From Octopus sinensis (Eukaryota), in contig NW_021835698.1 in NCBI RefSeq assembly GCF_006345805.1, forward strand, positions 1-38,592: 38,592 nucleotides of DNA, given 5' to 3'. This document shows, one piece after another, positions 176-30,244 of the stretch. Position numbers and translations under genes: made by a program. Numbering within the stretch: the stretch's first letter is position 1; every line of letters starts with the position of its first letter. The notes beneath the pieces are model-generated. The model worked only from the letters and a program-made list of their open reading frames with translations. It was not told the origin of the DNA and made no database searches.

Positions 176-588
176 CATTATATATATATATATATATATA
201 TATAACGTATATATATATATGTGTGTGCGTGTGTATACATAAATTGGAGTGGCTTGCTTACCAACCACATGCGAAACCATGGCAACGTGTTACCATTCTC
301 GTTCCATGTGACATGGTTTTCTCTTTTTGGTTGCTATTTCTAACTTTCAAAGAGTAAAATGCCCATGGCCTTTTAAGGGCCCCTAAGACTGGTGGGTCGA
401 AGGAAGGAACTTATCGTCAAACCAGAGAACTTGCTCTAATACTTGCAAAAGGTACCCAAACCTCATCCGTCTTCAACTCATTCCTCTTCCCTAGTAAGAA
501 GCTCCGTCTGCACTAGTTTTGCTATTTTAATTATTTATCACAATGCTTCAAGCAAGCTGCAACAATCTTTAATATAATATAATATAGA

Positions 589-634
<46 letters not shown>

Positions 635-642
635 TATAGACC

Positions 643-814
643 ACCACACACACGAATACACGAAGGTATAGCGAAGCGTGCCAACATAAACAAATAAGAG
701 AGAGAAGACATGCGTCTGCATACTTTTGCTTATGAAACGAAACGTACCCTGCCAATACAAAGCGATCACATTATGAGGGAGGGAGAGAGAGAGAGAGGGA
801 GGGAGAGAGAGAGA

Positions 815-851
<37 letters not shown>

Positions 852-870
852 TCGGAGTACCTGATGGTGG
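643..870 (+). repeat. Dispersed repeat or local duplication, copy A (copy B at 8525-8730)
   Basis: accacacacacgaatacacgaagg...cacattatgagggaggg is near-identical to 8525-8671 (one 2-nt indel and one substitution seen), followed in both by (GA)n and gaaaatcggRgtacctga. Confidence 0.9.
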
Positions 871-1002
871 GGGACGAATTAGGTGTGCGACCCAAGAGCT
901 CAGACGTAAGGAAATCGGAACCAATACCGCAAGGCATCTCGTCCTAAATATCCACCACCACAACAACAGCAACAACAATGGCAACAATAAATATACTGAA
1001 TA

Positions 1003-1129
1003 CGTGGTTGTGTGGTAAGGAGTTTGCTTCCAACCACATGATTCTGGTTTCAGTTTCACTGCGTGGCCCCTGGCGAGTGGTCTTCTATTTGGTAGACAGA
1101 AACTGAATGATGCCCTTTGTATATATATA

Positions 1130-4685: not shown

Positions 4686-5003
4686 TTGTCCAACTATCTT
4701 CTCAGAGTTATCTATGTTTTGGTCTATGTACTTATTGTTTACGTGGCAATTGTTACATCCAATTTTGATATATTTAACTCTCATTCAGAGCATTGTAATG
4801 CGGCGTTATCTAGAGCAGAATACAACCAAAAAATTACCTTTATTGATAAAGAGGACTTACAAATTGATAATAATTTAAGTAGCAATAACCACGCGCCGAT
4901 AATTATCGCGCCGATAATGGACGTAGAAGTAGATTTAATGTGACATCTAATCTAAATGGTAATAAGAACAAGGATAAGTACATAGACCAAAACATAGAAA
5001 ACT

Positions 5004-5034
5004 CTGAGAAGGGGCAACAACCCTGAAACATGTC
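5004..5034 (+). ncRNA. Degenerate hammerhead ribozyme core
   Basis: CTGA-GA (1 nt short of CTGANGA), stem II AGGG/CCCT, GAAAC, palindromic ACATGT, then C (GUC site). Stem I does not pair. Confidence 0.4.
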
Positions 5035-5260
5035 TGTAGCTGTCGGACTAGCAGGTTGAAGCGGCTGACCTCCCCTGTTCGAAGGTTTAATAACGGACGC
5101 AGTTTGTGTGTCAAGTAGCTAGCTTGAGGCGATGGCTTCATGGAGCTAATCAGCGACAGCTTTATTCTTATTTTTAAGAATGCCATATTAGTATCGCGAT
5201 AACTATTAATTTCTGATAGGATAATTTTAGATAAAAGTAAGAAGCATACAATTAGTAACA

Positions 5261-6196
5261 TTGATAAAGAGAACTTACATATCCCTGATAAAAAAAAGTA
5301 ATAATTGCCACGTAAACAACAATAAAGATCATGCCAGAAATAATAGTAGAAATAGATTTACGATGACAAAAAATCCTAATGAAATTAAGAATAATAATAG
5401 GAACATTGAACTGAACAAAGGTAATACGGATAAGATAAACTTTGATAAAACTAAGAAACATGCAAATAAGAACATTAATAAATACATCGACTCTGGTGAG
5501 ATTAGGAACGATTCAAATAACCCCAATTCTAATTCTAAGAAATTTAATAGGAGGGACATAATGTGGCTAAACATCCCTTTCAACTGTGCGGTTTTATCAG
5601 ATATTCAGAGTAGATTCAAAACAATTCTAGAAAAGAACTTCTCATCCTCTCATAGATATCATAAAATTATTTCTAAAAAAACTGTCAGAATTTCTTATTC
5701 AACCCTCCCAAATATGTCCACTTTAATAGCCAAGATCAATAATAATAACATTAAACTAGCCAGGAAAAATTTAAATAATAGCAATAAGAATACAAATGAA
5801 AATTGTAGTAACATTACTGAAATTAATAATAGCCACAATAATAATAATGACTATCATAACATAAGTATAACCAATAGCTATAGAATTGCTAGTAATAATA
5901 ATAACACAAATAGGAACAATTATGTTAATAATAGGAATAATACCAAGAGTGAAAATACCATGAATGGAGACAACAATGATATCTACAATAACACTATACA
6001 TTTAGAAACTAATACCGGTAACAATAGTAACAGCACCAACAATATTAATAATGATGGTAGGGTTATAGAACCAAATGATAGTGTAGGAATACCGATAAAT
6101 GATAATACTACTTTAGATAATAACATTAACTACAATAACGATAACATTATTTTAGATAGCAGCAGTAACCAAAATAACGAAAAAATATACTCGTAA
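5261..6196 (+). pseudogene. PLE ORF fragment: Asn-rich linker between RT thumb and GIY-YIG
   Basis: The ORF contains DIMWLNIPF and HRYHKIISKKTVRISYSTLPNM, resembling the Penelope-clade post-RT region (IIWFNPPF...HKIFNRNTVKISYS). It stops out of frame with the downstream GIY-YIG. Confidence 0.75.
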
Positions 6197-6200
6197 TGTT

Positions 6201-6659
6201 TTGAGTAACAGTAATATGAGACTTCTGTCCTCGAGTAATTCCACATCGAATTATAATCCCCCTAGATGTAACTGCAGAATTAGATCAAAATGCCCGGCGC
6301 CTGGTCTATGCGGGTTAAATAACGTAATCTACAAATGCACCATAACCACAGATAATAACAAATATACCTATTTAGGATGTACTATAAATTTTAAAAAACG
6401 CCTTAGTAACCATCTATCTTCTTTCAAATTACGTCATAAAGCTGATAACACCACTCTTTCAAGTAAAATCTGGGAACTAAAAAACAATAATATTAAGTAT
6501 AACCTTAATTGGGAATTAGTTAGAAGAGCGATACCTTATAAAAATAGCAGAGTTGGTTGTCAACTTTGCTCCATGGAAACATTTGAAATACTAATGAATA
6601 AAAAAAATGATATTTTATTGAATAACCGGATAGAACTGGGTCTCCTGTATCCACGCTAG
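6201..6659 (+). pseudogene. PLE GIY-YIG endonuclease domain with preceding CxC..CP..C motif
   Basis: CNCRIRSKCPAPGLC-NNVIYKC...YTYLGCT..FKKRLSNHLSSF...TLSSKIWELK...CQLCSME...LLNNRIEL is typical of Penelope-type GIY-YIG C-termini. Confidence 0.88.
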
Positions 6660-7715
6660 GATTAAGATTCTTAAATATTTTAAATGATAACAGTATATAA
6701 AAATCACTTTGAATAAAGCATTGCTCTTACATATTATATATTATATATTTAATTAGACAGCTACGATCTCATTAGCTATGGTTATATTCTCTCTCTAACT
6801 GTACTAGGTGATACTTATATAAATTAGTTGATTAGAAACTTCATTCTATTAGACTATGTAGATAATTTAAATTATTTCTTTCTAATTTTTAGTCTATTTT
6901 AAGTAAACCTATTTATAGAAAATTGGTTAATTAGACTTCTTAGTTCCTTTATATACTACTAATAAATTTTGCTAATCCTAGACCTATAATATAACGGTTT
7001 TTCATTATGAAAAATAACTCTATTTCCTTTCTTCTGACCTCTTATTGTATTCCCATAACCTGGCAATGTACTAATAGTAACATTAATAAATAAAGAAATA
7101 AATTAAATGACCTCCGTTCGAATATTGCACTAAATACGCTAAAATGTGTTCCTATAGAAACAACCTTTGACCCCCCCCTTTTCACCTTCCCATTTCCTCT
7201 TTATATAGCAATTAACAACAGTAGGTGGTCAAAATTAACATTCCTCCTTTAAGCTCTGTGGTTCTTGCAGATTTCTATATCAGCCATTTCGTCTCCACTG
7301 AAAGACTGTCTCTACGCTTCACTGACCCTCCTACAACTGTTTCGGATTCTAACATAGCAGTTTTCAGAAATTTCGCACAAATGTATCCAAAATATCTTCA
7401 CACAGCTTGAATCACACTTTACTATGAACTATATATGGATAAATACATATTCTGTGAGTACGATACCTCTCATCATATCTCCAGGAATCAAACTTTCTTC
7501 AATATGGATGAATTTACATCCTCACTTTCATCTTCACTTTCTGGAAAACTAAGAGGTTTTGAAAAAGTTTTTCAAAAACCTGATATATGACTGTGCAATA
7601 CTAAAAGAACTTTCAGAAGTCAATTTGTTATCTAAATCTCATTTTTATAGAACTTTCCATGATGTTTCACGAGTGTAACATCACCCCCTTTGATGTTTGG
7701 AGATCACAGATGTTT

Positions 7716-7804
7716 TTTGAGCTGATGAGTACGGGTCACTTATATTTACTGCAATTTTTGTAGCCTTATTAAAGATGTCTTCGTACGAAACAATTGTACT
7801 GAAA
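7716..7804 (+). ncRNA. Type I hammerhead ribozyme in the PLE 3' region, 48-nt loop II
   Basis: Stem I tttgag/ctgaaa (1 mismatch); CTGATGA 7722-7728; stem II GTACG/CGTAC; GAAA; palindromic stem III ACAATTGT; predicted cleavage after A7798 (GUA). Confidence 0.75.
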
Positions 7805-7829
7805 TATTGATCCATTCTTGTTGCTTTTT

Positions 7830-7908
<79 letters not shown>

Positions 7909-8261: not shown

Positions 8262-8491
8262 CTATTTACAAATGTTCTAAAATCTTCACAGCCTTGGTTT
8301 TTTTTTCTCATTCTGAAAAAAACATTTTATATATACACATGCTGATGTATGACCTACGTTGGACTCCCTATTCGTATAATCACTGAACTTGGAGCTTAAC
8401 TATAGTCTATCCATAGCACTTATTCAGCATTACCTGACACCTTTGTCTTACACGACACCATTACCTCTCATAACCTATATATATAATATAT

Positions 8492-8524
<33 letters not shown>

Positions 8525-8525
<1 letters not shown>

Positions 8526-8730
8526 CCACACACACGAATACACGAAGGTATAGCGAAGCGTGCCAATAAACAAATAAGAGAGAGAAGACATGCGTCTGCA
8601 TACTTTTGCTTATGAAACAAAACGTACCCTGCCAATACAAAGCGATCACATTATGAGGGAGGGAGAGAGAGACAGGGAGGGAGAGAGAGGGGGATGGAGA
8701 GTGAGTGAGAGAAAATCGGGGTACCTGACG
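8525..8730 (+). repeat. Dispersed repeat or local duplication, copy B (copy A at 643-870)
   Basis: Direct alignment by eye with 643-870. Confidence 0.9.
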
Positions 8731-8842
8731 GAAATCGAAGCCACTCAGACGCGTACCGCCTGTCGCCACAAATTTGTTTATTCTGATTTCTGTTTCACTT
8801 TACACTCACATATATACATATACATACATACATACACGCACG

Positions 8843-8914
<72 letters not shown>

Positions 8915-9249
8915 TATGTTACAAAAAGAAAATAGAAACTACACGTGGAAATGTAAGGGGAGAGTAAGAAGAAAAATAATCGAAAAATGCAGATTGGAGA
9001 TCAAAAGGAGTAAAGGCTTTTTACGGAGAGTAACGCTAGACAAATGGAATTAGATGGACTGAGGTCATTTAGCCACGACTTTCCTTTTGTGTATATAATG
9101 AGAAAATGTGTGTGTTTACAAATGTGCTAATTAGGGGTACATCGAGAAAGGGGAGAAAGAGAAAATGCTTTCTGGAATTGGAATGAAATTTCAATGGGTT
9201 GACCACATCAAATTAAAAAGAAACCTTTCTCTCTCTTTCTCTCTCTCTT

Positions 9250-11999: not shown

Positions 12000-13430
12000 C
12001 ATATTCAGTTACATCAGGGAAACCAAAGTGCTTTTCAAGCATATAAATATATATGCAGGTATCCACATATAGTTGTATGTTATCATAACAAGTAGGGTTT
12101 TTCTTCAGAAGAAAGCTATTTTTGTGATTATGCAGTCAACATTTAAAGCATTAGATGTAACAATATATATATATATATATATATATTAGATGTGTGGAGG
12201 CGCAATGGCCCAGTGGTTTGGGCAGCGGACACGCGGTCGTAGGATCGTGGTTTCGATTCCCAGACCGGGCGTTGTGAGTGTTTATTGAGCGAAAACACCT
12301 AAAGCTCCACGAGGCTCCGGCAGGGGGTGGGTGGCGATCCCCGCTGTACTCTTTCGCCACAACTTTCTCTCACTCTTTCTTCTGTTGGCCTGCTCGCTTA
12401 GCCAGCGGGGTGGGGTCATTTGAAGGCTAAAACAATGCGAAGTGCATTGTGACCAGCGATGTGTAGCAACATCTGATAGCCTGGTCGGTTACGGTGATCA
12501 CGGTCACGGTGATATATTAGATGTAACACTATATACATTGTAGCAATATATACCTTGGGCATTAGTTCTACATTTGCAAGGCTTATTTCCACGATTCGCC
12601 ATGTGAGGGTTGTCAGGTGTAATTGTATTACTATCAATAATTTGTGTATCGTTACCTTTGTTATTTCATTTCATAGGTGGTTAGATGCATACGTAAGACT
12701 CGAACCTTTGGACTGATTGTTCGGTTTCGTTCTGTTAAATCTAGGTAAGTGTTCTGAAATATTAGGTGTTGTGGAGTATGTCGGTTAAATGTCTTGCTAT
12801 GCGCGATGGATACAGGTTTATCCAGAGCATGGGAGAATCCGGCTGCCATGTTGGATGAGATATTTAATCAGAAAGAAGAGTTAAACACTATCACGCTCCT
12901 CTTTCTCGGAATGCTTCCTACCAAACCGAACAGAAATTCTATTCTTCATATTATCAATTCTCACCTGTAAATCGCTCACAGGTATTCATCTTACAAAATT
13001 TATTGTTGCAATTATCACAGCAATTGATAATCTCATCATTTTTATCCTTATTGCTGCTATTTCTACTGTGTTTAGCAAGACGATTATGGTTATTATTGTT
13101 GTAGGATAATCCTTATCTGGATTATACTTAACAGAATTATTACCCTTAATACTCTCCTTATCTGTTGTGTTAATTTCTGTATTGTGTTGGTTTACCTTAT
13201 TATTGTTGATATCCTGCTGCTTTTAATCCTATTATTGCAGATGGTCCTTACGCTACTTTTCACTTTATTATTTAATATACGTATTCTTGATGTGAATGTT
13301 TTTCTAATAACATGATTATGACTGTTAATGCCATTATTAATAGCATTGTTATTAATGTTATCCTTAATATTATAAAAATTATTATTAATACATCTTGGCG
13401 ATAACTTCAATACTAAATTCCCTTATGGTC
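12000..13430 (-). mobile_element. Highly decayed Penelope-like element fragment, interrupted by a SINE
   Basis: Minus-strand translation gives RKRSVIVFNSSF*LNISSNM...LDKP...HSKTFNRHT / STTPNISEHL and PCKCRTN, matching the PLE linker and CxC motif of the + copy. An Asn-rich segment lies at ~13000-13420. Frameshifted and stopped. Confidence 0.65.
12194..12511 (+). mobile_element. Full-length tRNA-derived SINE (family C) with 13-bp TSD
   Basis: A box tggcccagtgg and B-box-like ggtttcgattccc; TSD atatattagatgt at 12181-12193 and 12512-12524. Confidence 0.85.
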
Positions 13431-14163
13431 AGGGCCCCATTGTCCACCTCGTGACCGATACGAGATCTACAGATGAGCCCACAGCGGCCGCAAGGAATTA
13501 CGTATGTTCTGCTTGGCTCCACGCTAATATAGTCCTTCCACCGGACTCTCCTTTCCTGGCTGACACGACGGCTTGCCTAAAATGCTCTGGTAGCTCGCTG
13601 GATGGTGCGGTGCCAAGTGCAGCGGTCAGTGGCCTGGGTGCTCCACTAGTGAGGGTCAATGTTACAAATTTTCAGGGTCTATTTTAGCATGCTTTTATAC
13701 TGCTTCTTGGGCGCAATAGCTGTTTCGACAGCCACAAGACAATTCTTCAAAGAATACTTTATACAAAACATTAGTTACTTTCAAATGTATTGAGTGCTTT
13801 ATTTGGCTGAACCCTTCAACAAACGAATATTACACAAGCACGCACACACCTGAGTGTAAACACCGATGTGTTATTTGTATTATAGACGTACGTATGAATT
13901 TGAAGCTACCAGTCACATGACTCCTTATAAATGAAGATATTTCCTCCGTCTGGTTGCTTTTCTCGCTACAAAAATGAAAGTTACAATGCGAAACAGTCAT
14001 TTTAACGAGTTGTATTTATTTATCACCCGACGAGATACATCTGCACCACCGGATGCTCCTGAAACAGTTGTTGAGTGTCCCACCCAAGAGGAATCTAGAT
14101 GTGTCGAAACAATTATCGGGATTAACAATAAATTCTCGTATATTCCATCTTCCGAATTTCATT

Positions 14164-14203
<40 letters not shown>

Positions 14204-14320
14204 GTGTCTGTGCGCGCGCACGCGTATGTATGTATGTATGTATGTATGTATGTAGTATGTATGTATAATATATATATATATTATATATGCGCGTGTGTGT
14301 GTGCGTGTATATATATGTAT

Positions 14321-14358
<38 letters not shown>

Positions 14359-14359
14359 G

Positions 14360-14872
14360 GCATAATTAAATCTCAGAATGAGATTGAAACAGTAATCGCT
14401 CGATAATGTAAAGTATAGAAGCCATCTTATCATGGCTAACCACATTGGGTAGGGGGTGTTACTGTAGCTTTATAGCCCCAAGAGATCGTCGTCTCTAGCT
14501 GGCTTTAGACACCATATCAGTGCCCTTGAAGTATTTGCAAAGGGAGGCCATCCCTTCCTCGCAAGCCTGAGTGATACGCTCGGACTAGTTTCGGGATTTT
14601 TGTCCCTTGTCAACGGGCGGTAACCACCAGGATGCGACGAAACTGAAGGCTTCCTTGCAAATATATAAGAGTTTTTCTAGTGGCGTCTCCCACTGATGTC
14701 GAAAAACTGACAGTAAGCATAATTAAATCTCAGAATGAGATTGAAACAGTAATCGCTCGATAATGTAAAGTATAGAAGCCATCTTATCATGGCTAACCAC
14801 ATAGGGGAGGGGGTGTTACTGTAGCTTTCCCCTATGTGGTTAGCCATGATAAGATGGCTTCTATACTTTACA
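14360..14872 (-). mobile_element. Non-autonomous PLE/retrozyme-like insert: 357-bp period with 112-bp direct repeats plus 44-bp terminal inversion
   Basis: 14360-14471 matches 14717-14828 (2 substitutions); 14829-14872 is the reverse complement of 14764-14807; HHR remnant inside; (TA)n on both sides. Confidence 0.75.
14577..14619 (-). ncRNA. Decayed type I hammerhead ribozyme
   Basis: Minus strand: cgcccg-TTGACAA (vs CTGACGA)-GGGA caaaaa TCCC-GAAAC-palindromic ACTAGT-C-cgagcg. Confidence 0.6.
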
Positions 14873-15041
14873 ATATATATATATATATATATAAATTTAT
14901 ATATAGAGGGCATATACATACATGCCAGAAGGCATTATACATACATGTCAAACGCTAAGAGGGACAATTAGTCATTTCTACCAAAAATATTACTAATCCC
15001 ACCGAATGCAATTTTTCAAAGTAAGACATTTAAAAAAATAT

Positions 15042-15089
15042 AGACCTGTATCACAGTGATTTCATACTTACGTACTCATCAGCAGGCCT
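15042..15089 (-). ncRNA. Type I hammerhead ribozyme, monomer 1
   Basis: Minus strand reads AGGCCUG CUGAUGA GUAC GUAA GUAU GAA AUCAC U GUGAU A CAGGUCU: 7-bp stem I, intact core, stem II with GNRA loop, stem III with a 1-nt loop. Confidence 0.88.
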
Positions 15090-15519
15090 GAATGTATTAT
15101 AATAAACAACGACCCTGCCCCGCTTAAGCCGATCAGCTAACTGCTCGACATCAACGAAGCACATGGGTGAGTTTACATATATTACATCCGGATAAATGGC
15201 AAACTTTTACGAATTGCATTTCGGGAGAGGAAAAGTTTTTTCGGAATAAAAATTTAGCAATTAGGACAACTACTTAATAAGGAAAACTTAACAAGAAATT
15301 GTCAGGTAGATAGCGTAAAAACCTCATAAGAGAAAAAATTTCGAAAATAATTATTTCTTATTGAACATATTAATTTATATATAGAGGGCATTATACATAC
15401 ATGCCAGAAGGCATTATACATACATGCCAAACGCTAAGAGGGACAATTAGTCATTTCTACCAAAAATATTACTAATCCCACCGAATGCAATTTCTCAAAG
15501 TAAGACATTTAAAAAATAG

Positions 15520-15567
15520 AGACCTGTATCACAGTGATTTCATACTTACGTACTCATCAGCAGGCCT
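15520..15567 (-). ncRNA. Type I hammerhead ribozyme, monomer 2
   Basis: Identical 48-nt motif, 478 bp from monomer 1. Confidence 0.88.
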
Positions 15568-15994
15568 GAATGTATTATAAATAAACAACGACCCTGCCCC
15601 GCTTAAGCCGATCAGCTAACTGCTCGACATCAACGAAGCACATGGGTGAGTTTACATATATTACATCCGGATAAATGGCAAACTTTTACGAATTGCATTT
15701 CGGGAGAGGAAAATTTTTTCGGAATAAAAATTTAGCAATTAAGGACAACTACTTAATAAGAAACTTAACAAGAAATTGTCAGGTAGATAGCGTAAAAACC
15801 TCATAAGAGAAAAAATTTCGAAAATAATTATTTCTTATTGAACATATTATTTATATATAGAGGGCATTATACATACATGCCAGAAGGCATTATACATACA
15901 TGCCAAACGCTAAGAGGGACAATTAGTCATTTCTACCAAAAATATTACTAATCCCACCGAATGCAATTTTTCAAAGTAAGACATTTAAAAAAAT

Positions 15995-16042
15995 AGACCT
16001 GTATCACAGTGATTTCATACTTACGTACTCATCAGCAGGCCT
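15995..16042 (-). ncRNA. Type I hammerhead ribozyme, monomer 3
   Basis: Identical 48-nt motif, 475 bp from monomer 2. Confidence 0.88.
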
Positions 16043-16272
16043 GAATGTATTATAAATAAACAACGACCCTGCCCCGCTTAAGCCGATCAGCTAACTGCTC
16101 GACATCAACGAAGCACATGGGTGAGTTTACATATATTACATCCGGATAAATGGCAAACTTTTACGAATTGCATTTCGGGAGAGGAAAAGTTTTTTCGGAA
16201 TAAAAATTTAGCAATTAAGGACAACTACTTAATAAGGAAAACTTAACAAGAAATTGTATTTATAATACATTC

Positions 16273-16320
16273 AGGCCTGCTGATGAGTACGTAAGTATGA
16301 AATCACTGTGATACAGGTCT
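16273..16320 (+). ncRNA. Type I hammerhead ribozyme in the inverted copy
   Basis: aggcctgctgatgagtacgtaagtatgaaatcactgtgatacaggtct; predicted cleavage after A16313 (AUA). Confidence 0.88.
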
Positions 16321-16587
16321 ATATTTTTTAAATGTCTTACTTTGAAAAATTGCATTCGGTGGGATTAGTAATATTTTTGGTAGAAATGACTAATTGTCCC
16401 TCTTAGCGTTTGGCATGTATGTATAATGCCTTCTGGCATGTATGTATAATGCCCTCTATATATAAATTAATATGTTCAATAAGAAATAATTATTTTCGAA
16501 ATTTTTTCTCTTATGAGGTTTTTACGCTATCTACCTGACAATTTCTTGTTAAGTTTTCCTTATTAAGTAGTTGTCCTTAATTGCTAA

Positions 16588-16624
<37 letters not shown>

Positions 16625-16694
16625 GGTCCCGGGTTGAGTCGGGGTTAACCACAGTAAATAAGGTACTCAATACATTGCAGAGTAAATTAATTTA

Positions 16695-16816
16695 TTTTCT
16701 AGAAGGAGCTTCTACAGGACTAGAACTGTTTCATTCAAATGAAATCATCAGGAAGCTTCCTGGTGATTTCATTTGAATGAAACAGTACTAGTCCTGTAGA
16801 AGCCCCTTCTAGAAAA
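16695..16816. repeat. 122-bp loopless palindrome made of two head-to-head HHR-like motifs
   Basis: 61-bp arms centred on aagctt (16753-16758) with 3 mismatches. Confidence 0.95.
16707..16757 (-). ncRNA. Hammerhead-like motif (left arm of the palindrome)
   Basis: Minus strand: agcttc-CTGATGA-tttcatttgaat-GAA-ACAG ttctagtc CTGT-A-gaagct. Stem II is weak (U-U at its base). The + arm copy has CTGGTGA. Confidence 0.6.
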
Positions 16817-17734
16817 AATATATATATATAGACACGCACACACACACACACACACACACTTAACTATCTCTATATCTGAATCTACCCATTTGCGCGCGAC
16901 TCTTTTTCCTCGTGTGCTTCTGTTGTAAAGAGCGACAAGGCAAGAGATGCAGAGGGGGAGGCAGGGGGGGAGAGAACCAGTGAAAGTGGAAGGAGTCACT
17001 GAAGGGGATCGGTGGGAGCAGATCTGGTCACGTGTCAGTTTGTTATGACTGAACCCGGTCTTTGTGTGTGTGTGTGTGTGTGCACGCGCGTCTTTCTGCA
17101 TGTCTCTGTATGCGCATGCGTCGTTCATAGACCACTTAAAACGACTGTGTGTGTGTGTTTGTTCATGTGTATCTATGTGTGTGTGTGTGTGTGTGCGTGC
17201 TTCTATACCTGTGTATGTTCGTGTATGTATGCTTGTGTATATCTGTTTATCCGCAGCTGCATGCATGTGTGTGTGTGTGTGCCCTCATCTATGTCTGTCT
17301 CTATATACGCCCGTGTGATTGTTTGCTTGTGTCTGTGTGTGTGTGTGTTTGCCAACGCCTTCCTTTCCCTTCTATTCCCTCCCCCCCCCGTTCGTCCCCT
17401 TTTTTTTCACTAACTCCTTTGTTTTGCTCTCCATTTCCCGCCACACTTTAAACCCAACCCTCCACCCCACCCGTCCCTTCCTGTATCTCCTTAGTAGCGG
17501 ACCTCCCCCGCCCCTCAACCATCACCATCACTTCATTGCCATTTCACCCCCATCCCCACCACCAACCACCACCACCACCACCGCCACCACCACCACCACA
17601 CCACCACCACCACCACTACCACCATCACCACCGCCACCACCACCTCACCACCATACTAATCCCTGACTCACAGTCACTCTTTGACTCATATCGTTTCTAT
17701 ATGCATCTGTTTTCATCCACGCAAATATATTTAT

Positions 17735-17777
<43 letters not shown>

Positions 17778-17826
17778 GATGCACAAACAGCTGCACCTAT
17801 ACGTGCATACATGTTGTTACATATAT

Positions 17827-17858
<32 letters not shown>

Positions 17859-18755
17859 GTGTATATATAGGCATATATATGTGTGTTTGTGTGTGTATAT
17901 GCATGTATGTGCACGCAAAAGTGATATTCTGTTTATGCTCGTATTCCTTCGTGATTCTATGTGTGTGTGTTCGCGCCCACGCATGTGCGCACACACACAC
18001 ACGTGCACACACGCACGCACGACTGTATCCCTGCATGTAGGTGTAATACTTTGACTGAGATGTATGGCTACGTGGGGGGGGGCATGGGGGAGGGGGAGGG
18101 CTGTACGCGCACGCACGCGCAACCGTTGCAGCCTCACTTTCATGCGAATCGTCTCGTGCTCCTACCTGCGACTCTGCGCGTGTGTGTGCGCGCGCTCGTG
18201 TCTGTGTGTCCGTGTGTCCTTTCATTTTGAATCTCTCTCTACGCAGATCTCTATTTTATGTCTGGTGTTGTTTCTGTTGTTATTTAGCCCTGGGTGAGAT
18301 GCGGATGAACAGATCTACGGTGAAATGTATTCCAGCTGTGACCATCCCGTTTATACCGTTTGGACATCAAACATCTCAGACAACGTTTATTTATGGGAAA
18401 TTTAGCTGCTATTTCTTGTAGTGTTTTTGACTACGTAGAGTCTATCGCAAGAGCGTATGCGCGTGTGCATAAGTGTGTGTGTGTGTGGGTGTGTGCGTGT
18501 GGGTGTGATTGTATGCGTGCGTGTGTTCATGTGTGTGTGTTTGCGCGCGTGTGTGTATGTGTGTGCATGCGTGCGTGCATGTGTGTGTGTGTGACGGTGT
18601 CAGCCTGTTTTGCAATGTTTGAACACATCTCAGTGCAAATGTGTGGTCTTATATTTGTTCTTTGTTTCTGTGTGTGCAGATACATATATTCATACGTATA
18701 CGTATATACACACACGAATATGCGTGTATATATATATATATATACGTACGTACGT

Positions 18756-20544: not shown

Positions 20545-20985
20545 ATATGACACCGCTAGAAAAAACTGCTGTTTTTTCTAGCGGTGTCATATGAAATTGT
20601 CACCCATAATTATGACCCTAGTATCGATCTATTGCATTTCAATCTATTTTAGATTTAGGGTTAGTTAGGGTTAGGGTTAGGGTTAGAGGTGGGGGAAGGG
20701 TATCTTTTTTTCTTCACAAATGTAAATAAACCCAATCTGTTTCTTAAATGAGGGACATATTCATACGGCACAGAATGTTTTCATCTCAATAGACGGTCAT
20801 TGATTAGTTGAAATTGCCGAAATGCAAGGAATTAAAGACCAAATATCTTACAAACTATAGAATTTTCTCAATAAAGCCAAGAGAAAAAGATGTTTTATAA
20901 ACACATTCTACCAGTATACGAAGTTTAAAATTCTTTAGTTACCTAGAAATTATGTTAAAAACTGGCGTTCAAACCGAAAAGATCC
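20545..20985 (+). mobile_element. Unclassified dispersed-repeat-like element starting with a perfect 22-bp hairpin and containing a short (TTAGGG)n run
   Basis: Hairpin arms 20545-20566 and 20571-20592 with loop tgct; ttaggg run at 20655-20686; follows (TA)n. Right boundary and class are uncertain. Confidence 0.5.
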
Positions 20986-21178
20986 CGGAATTACAGGTCA
21001 ATAACACATATTGAGTAAATTTTTAAAGAATTCAATATTCAATATGCTCAATTTTTGGCATGGATAAATAAAAATATCAATTTACTTACATCTGTGAGAT
21101 TTACGAGAAGACGCAGCTCTCCTCTCTGACTTGTGAGCAAAGACGGATTTCTTTATTTGTCAATACAAGACGAACATT

Positions 21179-21303
21179 GAGGGGACGAACATGGACACCA
21201 CAACACATAGAGGGGACGAACATGGACACCACAACACAGAGGGGACGAACATGGACACCACAACACATAGAGGGGACGAACATGGACACCACAACACATA
21301 GAG
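21179..21303 (+). repeat. 31-bp minisatellite x4
   Basis: gaggggacgaacatggacaccacaacacata; the second unit is 29 bp. Confidence 0.95.
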
Positions 21304-24316: not shown

Positions 24317-24790
24317 ATGTTAAGCACAAGCAATAAAGAACAATTGGGACTGCTAATAATAATTCCTCAGCAGTCCCCAGTTGTTCTTTATAGCTTCAAT
24401 GTGCTTAACTGGAATACCAGTGAAATAATGAAAATTGACAGAAAAATCCGCAAGCTGCTGACTTGTAATAAGATGCACCATCCAAAGGCAGAGGTGGATC
24501 GTCTTTACCTTCCAAGAGCTCAGGGAGGTCGAGGCTTGATCCAGCTTAAATTTACGTACAAAACTACCACAATCGGACGGGCCAAATACCTTGAAACAAC
24601 CAACGATTGGATGCTAAAACTTGTTGAAAAACATGAAAGACCGAAAAAACTTCACTCTAATCTGAAAGAGAGCAAAACATTTGCTACTGATCTCTCCGAT
24701 ACCCACCAGATTGATCAGGTTGAAGGAAATGCACCAACTGCTGCTGCAAAGAAAATGAAATTAATTGCAAAGACAAAAACATGAAAAATT
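24317..24790 (+). pseudogene. R4/Dong-like RT C-terminal (thumb) fragment
   Basis: PVVLYSFNVLNW...IDRKIRKLLT.NKMHHPKAEVDRLYLPRAQGGRGL is characteristic of REL-type non-LTR elements. Confidence 0.85.
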
Positions 24791-25690: not shown

Positions 25691-27050
25691 CCTTAGACTT
25701 CTTCTTCTGTTGCTGCTTTAGAGGTTGTACATTTTACTGCATTGTGCATTCGCCAACCTTCAAGCAGGACCGGAAGTATGCCAAGCCGAATGGTCTTTAA
25801 ATACTTTTTATTATTTCTTCATCTCCCTATGGCACTTTGCATTAAACCTTCAACCCTTTTTCTCTCCTCATCAGCTCCTCATTCCCCTTGCAATCCATTT
25901 TCCTTCACTTCCCAATCCTCTTCTCAGCTTCCTGTCGACCCGCTTCGCTCAGCTCCTCTTCGTCTTTGCCACTCCTTCCTCTTCGATCTGTCTCCCCATC
26001 TCGCTTTATTTACTCGTTTAACCCGAATCAGTTTCACGTTTCTTGAACCAGTTGGTCTTTGCTACTCGTCAGCTCTGGTTTTCTTTCTCCTTTCGGTTTC
26101 TGTTGATTGTCCCTTCCGATGACTTTCAACAAACACTTCTCTTGGTTGTGCTATGTTTCTATGCATCTCAACTTGTTATGTACCACAGAGGCCACCCGTT
26201 CGATTTCGTTTGGTTTTGCCATTTCTTTCATTCTGACCACTCCATTCTCAACTATCTTCACTTTACTACTAAACCTTCCCCCCACCCCAGTCCCTCTACC
26301 ACTTGCTGGGCCTAAGACTACTAAGCTTGGCTTGTCTTATTCAAATAAATACAATTCCCGAACTAACGACGCACAGTTTCAATTACACCCTTACCTATTG
26401 GTATAACTGTTGTAGTAAAAATGCTACAACCCTTCCCACCTGACAGGTGGTGTGACGCAGCAGCCACTCTCAGTTAGTTCTCTCCGCTGATTTTTGTTTA
26501 AATAATGCAAATTTCCCAGGCCATAAATATGTTCTCTTTTTTTTTTTTTTTTTTGGAGAAGTCTATGTATCTTGACTACAGAAGATAAAGTCAGTTATTG
26601 TACTGATGATAGCCACAGAGCCAGAAACACGTATCCACGACTACCTTCTTATTTCCAGAAAATTAGCCGGTCCTTTTCCTTAATGCCAGGTAAACTTTGG
26701 AGAATTTTTCAATCGTAATATTATCGCTCGTCTTCATGCGAGGTTGGCCTTAATTGCTGCTCAGTAATTATGCTGCGTCATGGAAAGGCGCAGATAATTG
26801 AAATCAAGAACTTATGTTGCAAGGCTTTTGATATCCTTGTACTCGTCTCTCTTTCTCTCCCCCTTCATTCTCTCTATATACATATAAATGTGAGTGTGTG
26901 TGTGTGTGTGTGTGTTGTGGGCGCCACGGTTCTGCAACGAAGTATATATATCTGCAACTGTTACAACGCGTTATTATGTTGTGTGCTTCTTCTGTCCAGT
27001 TTGTTGTCGCCACTGTAATGTTCTTATCACCACAGTTATGTTGTGGCCGT

Positions 27051-27323
27051 ATCTTTGACTCGTCTGTCTTTGACTCGCCTATCTTTGACTCGTCCATCTT
27101 TGACTCGTCTATCTTTGACTCGTCTATCTTTGACTCGTCCATCTTTGATTCGTCTATCTTTGACTCGTCCATCTTTGACTCGTCCATCTTTGACTCGTCT
27201 ATCTTTGACTCGTCAATCTTTGACTCGTCCATCTTTGACTCGTCTATCTTTGACTCGTATATCTTTGACTCGTCAATCTTTGACTCGTCAATCTTTGACT
27301 CGTCTATCTTTGACTCGTCTATC
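27051..27323 (+). repeat. 15-bp minisatellite, ~18 copies
   Basis: atctttgactcgtct with single-base variants. Confidence 0.95.
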
Positions 27324-29432: not shown

Positions 29433-29456
29433 AAACACAACATAAACAACAGATTG

Positions 29457-30152
29457 ATGATGTCGTCGACGGAGTTGGACTTTGACGACAAACCGCCGAC
29501 AGAACACGCCCCACCGCCGCCACCAACGTCTCTAAACAACAACAACCACGCGTCAACCACCACCACCACCACAACTATCACCAGCGGCGGACACACGAAG
29601 CCGACCCCGGCGGCACGGCATGTCCGCGACGACTCGGAGGAGCAGGACAAAGTGCCGCCGTTTTCCATCAACGGGGACGGCATCGATGACGGCGATGACG
29701 TTGGAGCTTACACGAACGGCGACGTGTGCGGCGCGTCGGAGGCGGCGCCGGCGGGCATGGTGAACAGTGCCGGATCAGGCGCTATAATGATCAACTCGAC
29801 CGGGATGAATTCGGAATTATGCCGTGAAATGGGTCAGCTGGATGTGGACGGCGAGGGCGAAGAGCCGGCCGAAAGTTTTTCGCTGGTCACCGCCATCGAT
29901 TTCGGTACCACGTTCTCAGGTTACGCTTATTCGTTGAGTTCCGAGATCGATGCCATTTTTACGAACAAGAACTGGGGTCAAACCCAGGGCTTTATGCTGC
30001 ACAAGACACCGACCTGCCTTTTGTTGCGACCCTCGGGCGAGTTCGAAGCGTTCGGCTTCGATGCCGTCTCCAAATATAACGATCTGAGCGAAGAAGAAGT
30101 CGACGATTATTATTATTTTGACAGATTTAAAATGAAGCTCTACGCCAACAAG
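29457..30152 (+). CDS. HSPA12: First (or early) coding exon of a heat shock 70 kDa protein 12 (HSPA12A/B-like) gene; 232 codons, phase-0 GT donor at 30153
   Basis: SLVTAIDFGTTFSGYAYS...NKNWG...HKTPTCLLL.P.GEFEAFGFDA..KYNDL....DYYYFDRFKMKL matches the HSPA12 N-terminal nucleotide-binding lobe; GC-rich codons; AAG|GTAAAT donor. The start is uncertain (ATG 29457; possible acceptor CAG ending at 29452). No further exons recognised in the window. Confidence 0.88.
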
Positions 30153-30244
30153 GTAAATATATAAATATATATGCAGATATGCACCTTATGTATATATACA
30201 CAACCATACACATACATGAAAACACACATACAAACGCACTCGCA

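What the first reader, a model, noticed from the sequence alone, without database searches (positions are those of the whole stretch)
14894..16595. Tandem array of ~477-nt non-coding monomers, each with an intact hammerhead ribozyme (candidate cephalopod retrozyme/circRNA system)
Seen: ~2.85 near-identical tandem units plus an inverted partial unit. Each carries the same 48-nt type I HHR (7-bp stem I, CUGAUGA, GAAA, AUA cleavage triplet) at 478- and 475-bp spacing, and there is no ORF. Established: tandem HHR repeats of this architecture (newt satellite 2, schistosome SMalpha, metazoan non-LTR retrozymes, Penelope pseudo-LTRs) are transcribed as multimers, self-cleave to monomers and can circularise. 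Inference: a minus-strand transcript would release ~475-478-nt monomers that form circRNA and are mobilised in trans by a PLE RT. The near-identity of the units suggests a recent insertion. I cannot tell whether this family has already been described.
Basis: partly seen in the sequence, partly recalled or inferred. Interest (0 to 1): 0.92.

Follow-up and report, generated by a model that had tools for sequence, protein, structure and literature searches.

The report
Hammerhead-ribozyme retrozyme array in octopus DNA
A young, non-coding tandem repeat in what looks like an octopus genome carries a complete self-cleaving hammerhead ribozyme motif in every unit and was inserted in the manner of Penelope-like retroelements, so it is a new example of the known "non-LTR retrozyme" class, not a new kind of system.

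Summary
Positions 14894-16257 hold 2.86 head-to-tail units of 475-479 nt, and a 339-nt inverted partial unit follows at 16257-16595. Units differ at 3 substitution sites plus a few short indels. All four copies carry the same 48-nt type I hammerhead, on the minus strand in the array and the plus strand in the inverted copy. No ORF exceeds 54 codons.

A full hammerhead descriptor matched 0 of 2000 shuffled windows. Rfam does not call the motif: the best hit is HH9 at 19.5 bits against a gathering score of 52. The ribozyme is a minimal variant. It has a G10.1·U11.1 wobble, no loop 1 and a quasi-palindromic helix III, and folding predicts that it pairs as a dimer.

The sense monomer is strongly self-paired (z = -7.7) and has 33% GC. 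A head-to-head 5'-truncated copy, a partial tandem and (TA)n on both sides match the published insertion signature of Penelope-like elements.

Best reading: a non-LTR retrozyme, meaning a non-autonomous Penelope-like element. Octopod origin is supported by shared repeats with Octopus sinensis. Copy number, transcription, cleavage and circularisation could not be tested. Verdict: a new member of a known kind, of moderate interest.

The parts
14873..14893 (.). Left flanking (AT)n microsatellite. It is the presumed target sequence and abuts the 3' end of the minus-sense array.
   Evidence: Sequence read; TRF row 14873-14905.
14894..15372 (-). Unit 1, a full 479-nt monomer and the 3'-most unit of the minus-sense array.
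   Evidence: Alignment A1; BLAST gives 97.9% identity to unit 2.
15373..15848 (-). Unit 2, a full 476-nt monomer.
15849..16257 (-). Unit 3, 5'-truncated. It covers monomer positions 70-476, and its 5' end forms the head-to-head junction.
   Evidence: 98.5% identity to unit 2.
16257..16595 (+). Inverted 5'-truncated copy, plus-sense. It covers monomer positions 266-476 plus 1-125, and its 3' end abuts (TA)n.
   Evidence: the repeat finder I1, I2 and I8; BLAST 99% and 98.4%; 0 substitutions against unit 3 over 212 nt.
15042..15089 (-). Type I hammerhead motif of unit 1. Predicted cleavage is after A15049.
   Evidence: Descriptor hit; pattern search.
15520..15567 (-). Type I hammerhead motif of unit 2. 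Predicted cleavage is after A15527.
15995..16042 (-). Type I hammerhead motif of unit 3. Predicted cleavage is after A16002.
16273..16320 (+). Type I hammerhead motif of the inverted copy. Predicted cleavage is after A16313.
   Evidence: HH9 alignment in register with the core.
15527..16001 (-). Predicted 475-nt monomer RNA released by two cleavages. The second monomer is 15049-15526 (478 nt).
   Evidence: Linear MFE -133.5 kcal/mol, z = -7.7. Circular MFE -126.8 kcal/mol, 66% of nucleotides paired, 17 G·U pairs.
16596..16621 (.). Right flanking (TA)n microsatellite. It abuts the 3' end of the inverted copy.
   Evidence: Sequence read; TRF row 16593-16621.

Best explanation
This locus is one insertion of a non-autonomous, hammerhead-bearing retroelement of the metazoan non-LTR retrozyme class, a non-coding relative of Penelope-like elements (PLEs), in an octopod genome.

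Shown by the sequence:
- The unit is about 477 nt, has 33% GC and contains no ORF.
- Each unit carries a core-complete type I hammerhead on one strand only.
- The sense RNA is unusually self-paired, partly through G·U pairs that exist only in that polarity.
- The insertion is a 2.86-unit head-to-tail array joined head-to-head to an inverted 5'-truncated copy. Both outer (3') ends lie in a (TA)n microsatellite.

Inferred life cycle:
- A minus-strand transcript through the array folds its hammerheads. They most likely pair two at a time through the quasi-palindromic helix III (AUCAC-U-GUGAU).
- Cleavage after AUA releases 475- and 478-nt monomers with 5'-OH and 2',3'-cyclic phosphate ends.
- A host RtcB-type tRNA ligase circularises the monomers.
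- A PLE reverse transcriptase/GIY-YIG endonuclease supplied in trans nicks a (TA)n target and primes cDNA synthesis on A/U-rich patches of a circular or multimeric template. This would explain a cDNA longer than one unit and two arms that start at different monomer positions (about 476 and 125).
- Priming from both target strands would give the head-to-head inverted arm.
For: - The array and inverted copy are real.
- The full hammerhead descriptor is present 4 times and matched 0 of 2000 shuffled windows.
- All invariant core positions are present and align in register to the Rfam HH9 consensus.
- The sense monomer folds at -133.5 kcal/mol against -94.6 +/- 5.1 for shuffles (z = -7.7). The antisense gives -95.1 (z = -3.7). 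The sense circle has 66% of nucleotides paired and 17 G·U pairs against 8.
- Two ribozyme copies cofold at -30.5 kcal/mol, against 2 x -12.4 for separate copies, with an intermolecular helix III and helices I and II intact. The monomeric helix III has a pair probability of about 0.02. This is the dimer behaviour reported for newt, axolotl and PLE hammerheads (PMC4209133; PMC7229834).
- No ORF is present.
- GC content, unit size and tandem number fall within published retrozyme ranges: GC below 45-50%; units of 150-450 bp, up to 972 bp; most families have 7 units or fewer.
- The operational definition 'type I HHR in all tandem repeats' is met.
- Partial tandem, adjacent inverted 5'-truncated copy and (TA)n target match the PLE insertion signature. 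Non-autonomous PLEs are reported to give multicopy head-to-tail insertions (PMC8557442).
- The copies differ at only 3 substitution sites in about 1.7 kb, plus short indels. The two arms at the junction are the most alike.
- PLE-type RT plus GIY-YIG genes exist in Octopus sinensis and are reported in cephalopods.
Against: - Rfam models do not reach threshold.
- The 10.1-11.1 pair, which is highly conserved as G-C, is G·U here.
- There is no internal loop 1, loop 2 is a 4-nt GUAA, and no canonical tertiary contact is recognisable. Monomeric activity may therefore be very low, as reported for PLE min-HHRs.
- All four ribozyme copies are identical, so there is no covariation evidence.
- No second locus could be found. 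None exists in the window. Metagenome, viral and prokaryote contig scans found none. Exact and homology look-ups of the small ORFs also found none. None of those collections is a cephalopod genome, so mobility rests on one insertion's architecture.
- No autonomous PLE with a matching 3' end was identified. The GIY-YIG-encoding repeat at 4748-7839 shares no sequence with the monomer.
- No transcript data are available.
Confidence: 0.72

Rival explanations
1. This is a local minisatellite, not a circRNA-borne insertion. A hammerhead-containing terminal fragment of a PLE (a pLTR remnant) landed here once. It was then amplified in place by unequal crossing-over or replication slippage, with a later local inversion. 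The ribozyme is a passenger and the array is not mobile.
For: The 2026 preprint proposes this route for retrozyme arrays: a PLE terminal sequence followed by local amplification. Only one locus is visible. Near-identity of the units is also what recent unequal crossing-over or gene conversion would produce.
Against: No PLE coding remnant adjoins the array. Both outer ends sit in one (TA)n tract and are both element 3' ends. The inverted arm is joined head-to-head with at most 1 nt of overlap. A single PLE-type integration event explains this better than amplification plus a separate inversion. The strong sense-strand-specific RNA structure is not expected of a passive satellite.
Confidence: 0.15
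2. This is an ordinary tandem repeat in which a hammerhead-like string arose by chance. No ribozyme function exists.
For: Rfam scores are far below gathering thresholds. The 48-nt motif is not more stable than shuffles (z = -1.03). The G10.1·U11.1 wobble and the lack of tertiary motifs are atypical. The four copies count as a single independent occurrence.
Against: The full descriptor (core plus three helices in the correct register) occurred in 0 of 2000 shuffled windows, and in 7 of 2000 even when relaxed to helices of 3, 2 and 2 bp. It sits in a repeat with every other retrozyme property and a PLE-type insertion structure. Helix III is palindromic, as in known dimer-dependent hammerheads.
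Confidence: 0.06
3. The structure is an assembly artefact. The tandem copy number, the inverted arm or both were created by mis-assembly of repeats or by chimeric fold-back long reads.
For: PLE-type tandem and inverted structures are known to cause assembly problems. Several differences between units are 1-2-nt indels in or beside homopolymer runs, which is typical of long-read error.
Against: The junction is not a fold-back palindrome. The sequences on its two sides correspond to different monomer positions (70 and 266) and are not reverse complements of each other. Both ends continue into unique flanking sequence. The units carry private substitutions.
Confidence: 0.05

Closest known systems
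Metazoan non-LTR retrozymes (Cervera & de la Peña 2020, PMC7229834), especially those of the mussel Mytilus galloprovincialis
   Same: [quoted passage not shown] Both give a highly self-paired monomer RNA. The mussel ribozymes also lack most loop1-loop2 tertiary-contact nucleotides. The host genomes also contain PLEs.
   Different: The unit is longer, at 477 nt against 350-390 nt in mussel and 170-400 nt for the described circRNAs. The ribozyme sequence is unrelated at the primary level as far as could be judged. It has a G10.1·U11.1 wobble and a 4-bp palindromic helix III. Expression and circularity are unknown here. The host is a cephalopod, and no paper in the searched library describes retrozymes in cephalopods.
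Newt/axolotl satellite 2 hammerheads (HHR_Amex1/2) and PLE 'min-HHRs' (PMC4209133)
   Same: All are type I hammerheads in tandem repeats with a weak, palindromic helix III, so that two neighbouring ribozymes can build one extended helix III. A weakened base of helix II is tolerated in HHR_Amex2.
   Different: Helix III here has 4 bp and a 3-nt loop, against 1-2 bp in the amphibian ribozymes and none in the min-HHRs. The amphibian ribozymes keep the loop1-loop2 contacts. PLE min-HHRs usually have a 6-8-bp helix II, an extra nucleotide after A9 and a conserved G10.1-C11.1 pair.
Penelope-like elements and their non-autonomous derivatives (Craig et al. 2021, PMC8557442; Li et al. 2026 preprint)
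   Same: The insertion architecture matches: partial head-to-tail tandem, an inverted 5'-truncated copy abutting the 5' end, and insertion into a (TA)n microsatellite so that no target-site duplication can be read. Canonical PLEs carry a hammerhead in the repeated part.
   Different: No RT or GIY-YIG ORF lies within the element. No sequence link to a particular autonomous PLE was shown. (TA)n preference is documented for Naiads, which lack canonical hammerheads, and is hypothesised for Neptune. The 30-40-bp 'tail' could not be identified.
Plant LTR retrozymes (PMC4918200)
   Same: Both are non-autonomous, non-coding, hammerhead-flanked units thought to propagate through circular RNA.
   Different: The plant elements have type III hammerheads inside LTRs, a PBS and PPT, 4-bp TSDs, GC above 55% and Gypsy-type mobilisation. 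None of these features is present here.

Membership tests
Hammerhead ribozyme, type I | Invariant catalytic core: C3 U4 G5 A6 N7 G8 A9, G12 A13 A14, A15.1-U16.1 and H17 at the cleavage site | tested here: met
   CUGAUGA ... GAA A ... U A| is present in all four copies. It aligns in register to the Rfam HH9 consensus with high posterior probability.
Hammerhead ribozyme, type I | Three helices around the core, with helix I open and helices II and III closed by loops | tested here: met
   Helix I has 7 bp, helix II has 4 bp with a GUAA loop, and helix III has 4 bp with a CUG loop. Helices I and II are in the MFE structure. Helix III forms only in the dimer model.
Hammerhead ribozyme, type I | Conserved G10.1-C11.1 pair at the base of helix II | tested here: not met
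   The pair is a G10.1·U11.1 wobble (GUAC/GUAU). The literature calls G-C 'highly conserved'. A U·U at this position is tolerated in the axolotl HHR_Amex2.
Hammerhead ribozyme, type I | Loop 1-loop 2 tertiary interaction of canonical metazoan type I motifs | tested here: not met
   No internal loop or distal stem follows the 7-bp helix I. Loop 2 has 4 nt where the HH9 consensus has 6. The mussel and PLE variants lack this interaction as well.
Hammerhead ribozyme, type I | Score at or above the Rfam gathering threshold for a hammerhead covariance model | tested here: not met
   There is no hit at gathering thresholds. The best hit is HH9 at 19.5 bits against 52.
Hammerhead ribozyme, type I | Site-specific self-cleavage | not testable with these tools
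   This needs in vitro transcription of monomer and dimer constructs.
Metazoan non-LTR retrozyme | Tandem repeats of roughly 150-1000 bp with a type I hammerhead in every unit | tested here: met
   The array has 2.86 units of 475-479 nt, with hammerheads in 3 of 3 units and in the inverted copy. The definition is given.
Metazoan non-LTR retrozyme | Non-coding; no LTR, PBS or PPT; low GC | tested here: met
   The longest open frame is 54 codons. GC is 33%. The only repeats are the units themselves.
Metazoan non-LTR retrozyme | Monomer RNA is highly self-paired | tested here: met
   z = -7.7 against shuffles, and 66% of nucleotides are paired in the circle.
Metazoan non-LTR retrozyme | Multiple dispersed loci in the genome (a mobile family) | not testable with these tools
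   No cephalopod genome can be searched by DNA with these tools. There is one locus in the window. The collections that could be scanned gave no hits.
Metazoan non-LTR retrozyme | Expressed as linear and circular RNA of unit length | not testable with these tools
   No transcriptome data are available.
Metazoan non-LTR retrozyme | Co-occurrence with autonomous PLEs in the host genome | tested here: inconclusive
   An RVT_1 fragment upstream of a GIY-YIG domain is present in an O. sinensis locus. PLEs are reported in cephalopods. The window's own species is unidentified, and no PLE RT was found in the window.
Penelope-like element insertion (autonomous or non-autonomous) | Partial head-to-tail tandem (pLTR-type) organisation | tested here: met
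Penelope-like element insertion (autonomous or non-autonomous) | Inverted 5'-truncated copy immediately adjacent to the 5' end | tested here: met
   The head-to-head junction is at 16257. The two arms start at monomer positions 70 and 266. The feature is described.
Penelope-like element insertion (autonomous or non-autonomous) | Insertion into a microsatellite, (TA)n for Naiads | tested here: met
   (AT)n at 14873-14893 and (TA)n at 16596-16621 flank the unit.
Penelope-like element insertion (autonomous or non-autonomous) | A 30-40-bp 'tail' extension at one end | tested here: inconclusive
   No family consensus is available to define the ends, and the boundaries are ambiguous within about 6 nt of AT-rich sequence.
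Penelope-like element insertion (autonomous or non-autonomous) | RT plus GIY-YIG ORF (autonomous PLE) | tested here: not met
   No ORF lies within the element. It can therefore be only a non-autonomous derivative.
Penelope-like element insertion (autonomous or non-autonomous) | Sequence similarity of the unit to the pLTR or 3' end of an autonomous PLE of the same genome | not testable with these tools
   This needs the host genome or a Repbase-type library. There is no similarity to anything else in the window or in L002.

The most novel reading that the evidence does not exclude
This locus may be a snapshot of how retrozymes integrate. A hammerhead-bearing circular or multimeric RNA would have been copied by a (TA)n-targeting PLE enzyme, of the Naiad or Neptune type, which does not itself need a hammerhead. 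Priming would have occurred by A/U microhomology at internal template sites on both target strands. That would explain the more-than-unit-length array, the two different 3' ends and the head-to-head arm. If so, the family is young and active in octopods, produces abundant 475-478-nt circRNAs, and shows hammerhead RNAs parasitising PLE machinery rather than descending from one PLE lineage. A read-through transcript would also form a 336-bp dsRNA hairpin, a possible substrate for the extensive A-to-I editing or RNAi systems of coleoids.
Probability: 0.2. Interest if true: 0.55.

Novelty: new member of a known kind. Interest (0 to 1): 0.36.

Why it matters
Non-LTR retrozymes and their circRNAs have been shown experimentally in a coral, a mussel and salamanders. 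They were recently tied phylogenetically to PLEs in vertebrates. An octopod family would extend the class to cephalopods, where none is described in the searched literature. Rfam-based annotation would miss this ribozyme because it scores below threshold.

This single young insertion also keeps both junctions intact. It shows a retrozyme with the structural hallmarks of PLE integration: (TA)n target, head-to-tail multimer and an inverted 5'-truncated arm. That is direct locus-level support for the idea that retrozymes are mobilised by PLE machinery from a circular or multimeric template. It also provides a defined construct for cleavage and circularisation assays.

Tried and rejected
- Rfam at gathering thresholds found nothing in the whole window. 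An E<=10 search of 13500-18000 gave only spurious miRNA-type hits on microsatellites and palindromes.
- Two other CUGAUGA...GAAA strings were examined. The one at 16700-16751 (minus) lies inside a perfect palindrome, has no separate helix II and GAAA, and failed the descriptor. CUGAGUGA at about 14568 has an extra core nucleotide. Both were rejected.
- Related copies were sought with hammerhead and monomer patterns in metagenome, viral and prokaryote genome contigs. All gave 0 hits.
- Exact look-ups of 8 monomer ORFs and 10 neighbouring ORFs found nothing in the collection. A homology search with the 54-aa open frame gave no candidates.
- Covariation analysis was not possible because the four ribozymes are identical.
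- The GIY-YIG ORF at 6201-6659 was tested as a possible partner. It belongs to a large repeat family with an 809-aa ORF in O. sinensis. Pfam sees no RT in that ORF, PDB sequences give nothing, and it shares no sequence with the monomer. No link was established.
- Species identification through the exon-like ORF at 29859-30164 gave only unnamed hits of 80% identity or less.
- A fold-back read artefact was rejected because the junction is not palindromic.
Full report
**1. Observation**

- TRF reports an array at 14889-16257 with period 479, 2.9 copies and 97% matches.
- The repeat finder gives unit-to-unit spacings of 475-479 nt. It also finds a 336-nt inverted arm (16257-16592) that is 97% complementary to 15248-15583.
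- BLAST of unit 2 against the window maps the minus-sense array to monomer positions 70-476, 1-476 and 1-476. The plus-sense inverted copy maps to positions 266-476 followed by 1-125.
- No other copy of the monomer exists anywhere in the 38.6 kb.

In alignment A1 the copies differ at only three substitution sites, all private to one unit. They also differ by eight short indel columns, mostly in or beside homopolymer runs. Unit 3 and the inverted copy meet at the junction and show no substitutions over 212 nt. The longest stop-to-stop frame in either strand is 54 codons.

**2. The ribozyme motif**

All four copies contain the identical 48-mer AGGCCUG-CUGAUGA-GUAC-GUAA-GUAU-GAA-AUCA-CUG-UGAU-A|CAGGUCU. 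It lies on the minus strand at 15089-15042, 15567-15520 and 16042-15995, and on the plus strand at 16273-16320.

This is a type I hammerhead.
- Helix I has 7 bp and is open.
- Helix II has 4 bp and a GUAA loop.
- Helix III has 4 bp (A15.1-U16.1 to A15.4-U16.4) and a 3-nt loop.
- H17 is A.
- Every invariant core nucleotide is present.

Predicted cleavage is after A16313 on the plus copy and after 15049, 15527 and 16002 on the minus strand. A minus-strand transcript would therefore release monomers of 475 and 478 nt.

A descriptor requiring the core and helices of at least 5, 3 and 3 bp matched 0 of 2000 dinucleotide-preserving shuffles of the window on both strands. Relaxed to 4/3/2 and 3/2/2 bp, it matched 1 and 7 of 2000. 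The four copies count as one independent occurrence, but that occurrence is not plausibly chance.

- Rfam finds nothing at gathering thresholds.
- It finds nothing among 77 E<=10 hits in a 4.5-kb search.
- When 111 nt are searched alone, HH9 scores 19.5 bits against a gathering score of 52, with E = 0.0074. The core is aligned in register, but there is a 2-nt shorter loop 2 and no distal helix I.

The motif departs from canonical metazoan hammerheads in three ways.
- The 10.1-11.1 pair is G·U rather than the highly conserved G-C.
- There is no loop 1 and no recognisable loop1-loop2 contact.
- Helix III is thermodynamically weak in the monomer.

In the 48-mer, the canonical fold costs -9.4 kcal/mol against an MFE of -12.4 kcal/mol, in which UGAU of the core pairs with AUCA. 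Helix III pairs have a probability of about 0.02. Two copies together fold at -30.5 kcal/mol, with an intermolecular 5+5-bp helix III around a U·U mismatch and both helices I and II intact.

That is the dimeric architecture described for newt and axolotl satellite ribozymes and for PLE min-HHRs. Those ribozymes cleave poorly as single motifs. I therefore call the ribozyme core-complete but minimal and probably dimer-dependent. Activity is untested.

**3. The monomer RNA**

The excised sense monomer (15527-16001, minus strand) folds at -133.5 kcal/mol. Shuffles give -94.6 +/- 5.1, so z = -7.7. The complementary strand gives -95.1 kcal/mol and z = -3.7.

As a circle, the sense RNA has an MFE of -126.8 kcal/mol. 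It has 66% of its nucleotides paired and 17 G·U pairs. The antisense circle has 58% paired and 8 G·U pairs.

One example of polarity-specific structure is the duplicated 23-mer GGCAUGUAUGUAUAAUGCC(U/C)UCU. It forms a long hairpin through G·U pairs in the sense polarity, and these become A-C mismatches in the other polarity. GC content is 33%. High self-pairing and low GC are listed properties of metazoan non-LTR retrozymes.

**4. Architecture of the insertion**

The sense strands of the array and of the inverted copy diverge from a single junction at 16257. Both are 5'-truncated there, at monomer positions 70 and 266, and they overlap by at most 1 nt. Both outer ends are element 3' ends and run directly into one microsatellite: (AT)n at 14873-14893 and (TA)n at 16596-16621. 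The two 3' ends lie at different, A/T-rich monomer positions (...UAUAUAUAAAUU and ...AAAUUUUUAU).

Craig et al. describe the following for PLEs:
- partial tandems;
- a strong bias for microsatellites, (TA)n in Naiads, that hides target-site duplications;
- multicopy head-to-tail insertions of non-autonomous derivatives.

The locus fits this description point by point, except for the 30-40-bp tail, which I could not assess.

The junction is not a fold-back palindrome, which argues against a chimeric-read artefact. An array longer than one unit implies a multimeric or circular template. The 3' ends are not at the ribozyme cleavage site, which argues against priming on the end of a linear cleaved monomer. 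These last two points are inference.

**5. Host and surroundings**

The ORF at 6201-6659 has a marginal GIY-YIG match (22.4 bits against a cut-off of 22.6). Its only close relative is an Octopus sinensis protein at 75% identity. The O. sinensis locus (L002, CM016863.1) aligns to window 5260-6703 at 73% identity. It also shares a 326-nt repeat with window 12173-12498 at 91% identity. The window is therefore from an octopod related to, but probably not identical with, O. sinensis.

In O. sinensis the repeat carries an 809-aa ORF. The window copy is truncated and frameshifted. Pfam finds no RT in that ORF or in its long relatives. The family is very large, with 3984 representative clusters.

The same O. 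sinensis stretch happens to contain a canonical PLE-like pair, an RVT_1 fragment upstream of a GIY-YIG domain. The literature reports Naiad and Penelope elements in cephalopods.

No RT is detectable near the array. An exon-like ORF lies 13 kb away on the other strand. The array is flanked by unrelated perfect palindromes at 14760-14876 and 16683-16828.

**6. Mechanism**

The best-supported model is a non-LTR retrozyme. The steps, all inferred from the family, are:
- transcription of the minus strand;
- hammerhead cleavage, probably in dimeric form;
- ligation of the monomers into circles by a host tRNA ligase;
- reverse transcription and integration by a PLE RT/endonuclease supplied in trans, at a (TA)n target.

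What is shown here is the motif, the unit properties, the polarity-specific structure, the insertion architecture and the youth of the copies.

The rivals are as follows.
- Local DNA-level amplification of a PLE terminal fragment, a route proposed in the 2026 preprint. I give it about 0.15.
- A chance motif, about 0.06.
- Mis-assembly, about 0.05.

**7. Comparison and novelty**

The locus meets the operational definition of an active non-LTR retrozyme, a type I hammerhead in all tandem repeats. Its unit length and repeat number are within published ranges.

The closest described relatives in the same phylum are the mussel retrozymes. They have 350-390-bp units, ribozymes that also lack the tertiary-contact nucleotides, and up to 1% of total RNA as circles.

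No paper in the searched library couples retrozymes with cephalopods. The giant squid genome paper only counts 235 Rfam 'hammerhead 1' hits. The searched library is incomplete, so prior description elsewhere cannot be excluded.

Genome-wide copy number, the autonomous partner, transcription, cleavage and circularity could not be tested. No cephalopod genome or transcriptome can be searched by DNA with these tools.

**8. Verdict**

It is a new member of a known kind. Interest is moderate (0.36). A specialist would expect retrozymes in cephalopods. The clean junctions linking a retrozyme to PLE-type integration, and a ribozyme variant invisible to Rfam thresholds, are nevertheless useful.

Noticed in passing
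window 4748-7839 (+), ORFs 5261-6196 and 6201-6659; L002:2255-4684: This is a truncated, frameshifted copy of a repeat of at least 3 kb whose C-terminal domain is GIY-YIG-like (Pfam 22.4 bits against a cut-off of 22.6). It is 73% identical over 1450 nt to an Octopus sinensis locus with an intact 809-aa ORF, annotated 'myelin gene regulatory factor-like A', which is probably a misnomer. The family has 3984 representative clusters at E<=1e-3. Pfam sees no RT domain, although a YRDD-like motif is visible by eye. The element type is unresolved.
   Followed up: partly
L002:7844-9308 (-), Octopus sinensis CM016863.1: This is a canonical PLE-like arrangement. [quoted passage not shown] No hammerhead was found in the 9.3 kb that was fetched.
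   Followed up: partly
window 12173-12498: This 326-nt dispersed repeat is 91% identical to L002:656-969 of O. sinensis. It is the best evidence that the window comes from an octopod.
   Followed up: partly
window 14760-14876 and 14357-14471 / 14714-14828: A 117-nt near-perfect palindrome lies directly left of the (AT)n target. Its left arm and about 45 nt upstream are duplicated 357 nt away at 97% identity. It is MITE-like or a hairpin element.
   Followed up: no
window 16683-16828: A 146-nt palindrome has 73-nt arms, 89% complementarity (95% in the 122-nt core) and no spacer. It lies 60 nt right of the (TA)n tract. It attracts spurious sub-threshold miRNA-model hits and contains a CUGAUGA...GAAA string that is not a hammerhead.
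   Followed up: partly
window 14894-16595 as a whole: A transcript reading through the array and the inverted copy would fold into a 336-bp, 97% paired dsRNA hairpin. That is a potential ADAR or RNAi substrate in an animal known for heavy RNA editing.
   Followed up: no
window 29454-30164 (+): This exon-like ORF has 55 homologues of 80% identity or less in public assemblies. By eye it resembles an Hsp70-family N-terminus (AIDFGTTFSGYA), possibly HSPA12-like. Pfam gives no hit.
   Followed up: partly
window 24317-24784 (+): This 155-aa ORF resembles, by eye, the C-terminal region of non-LTR (LINE) retrotransposon ORF2 proteins. Pfam gives no hit.
   Followed up: partly
window 20655-20686; 27050-27323; 21174-21303: Three repeats were seen: an interstitial TTAGGG x5.7 telomere-type repeat, a 15-nt x18 minisatellite (TATCTTTGACTCGTC) and a 31-nt x4.3 repeat.
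   Followed up: no
window 569-1018 and 8461-8967: Two copies of another dispersed repeat share ORF-like strings (MRLHTFAYETKRTLPIQSDHIMREGE...). Each is next to GA/TA microsatellites.
   Followed up: no
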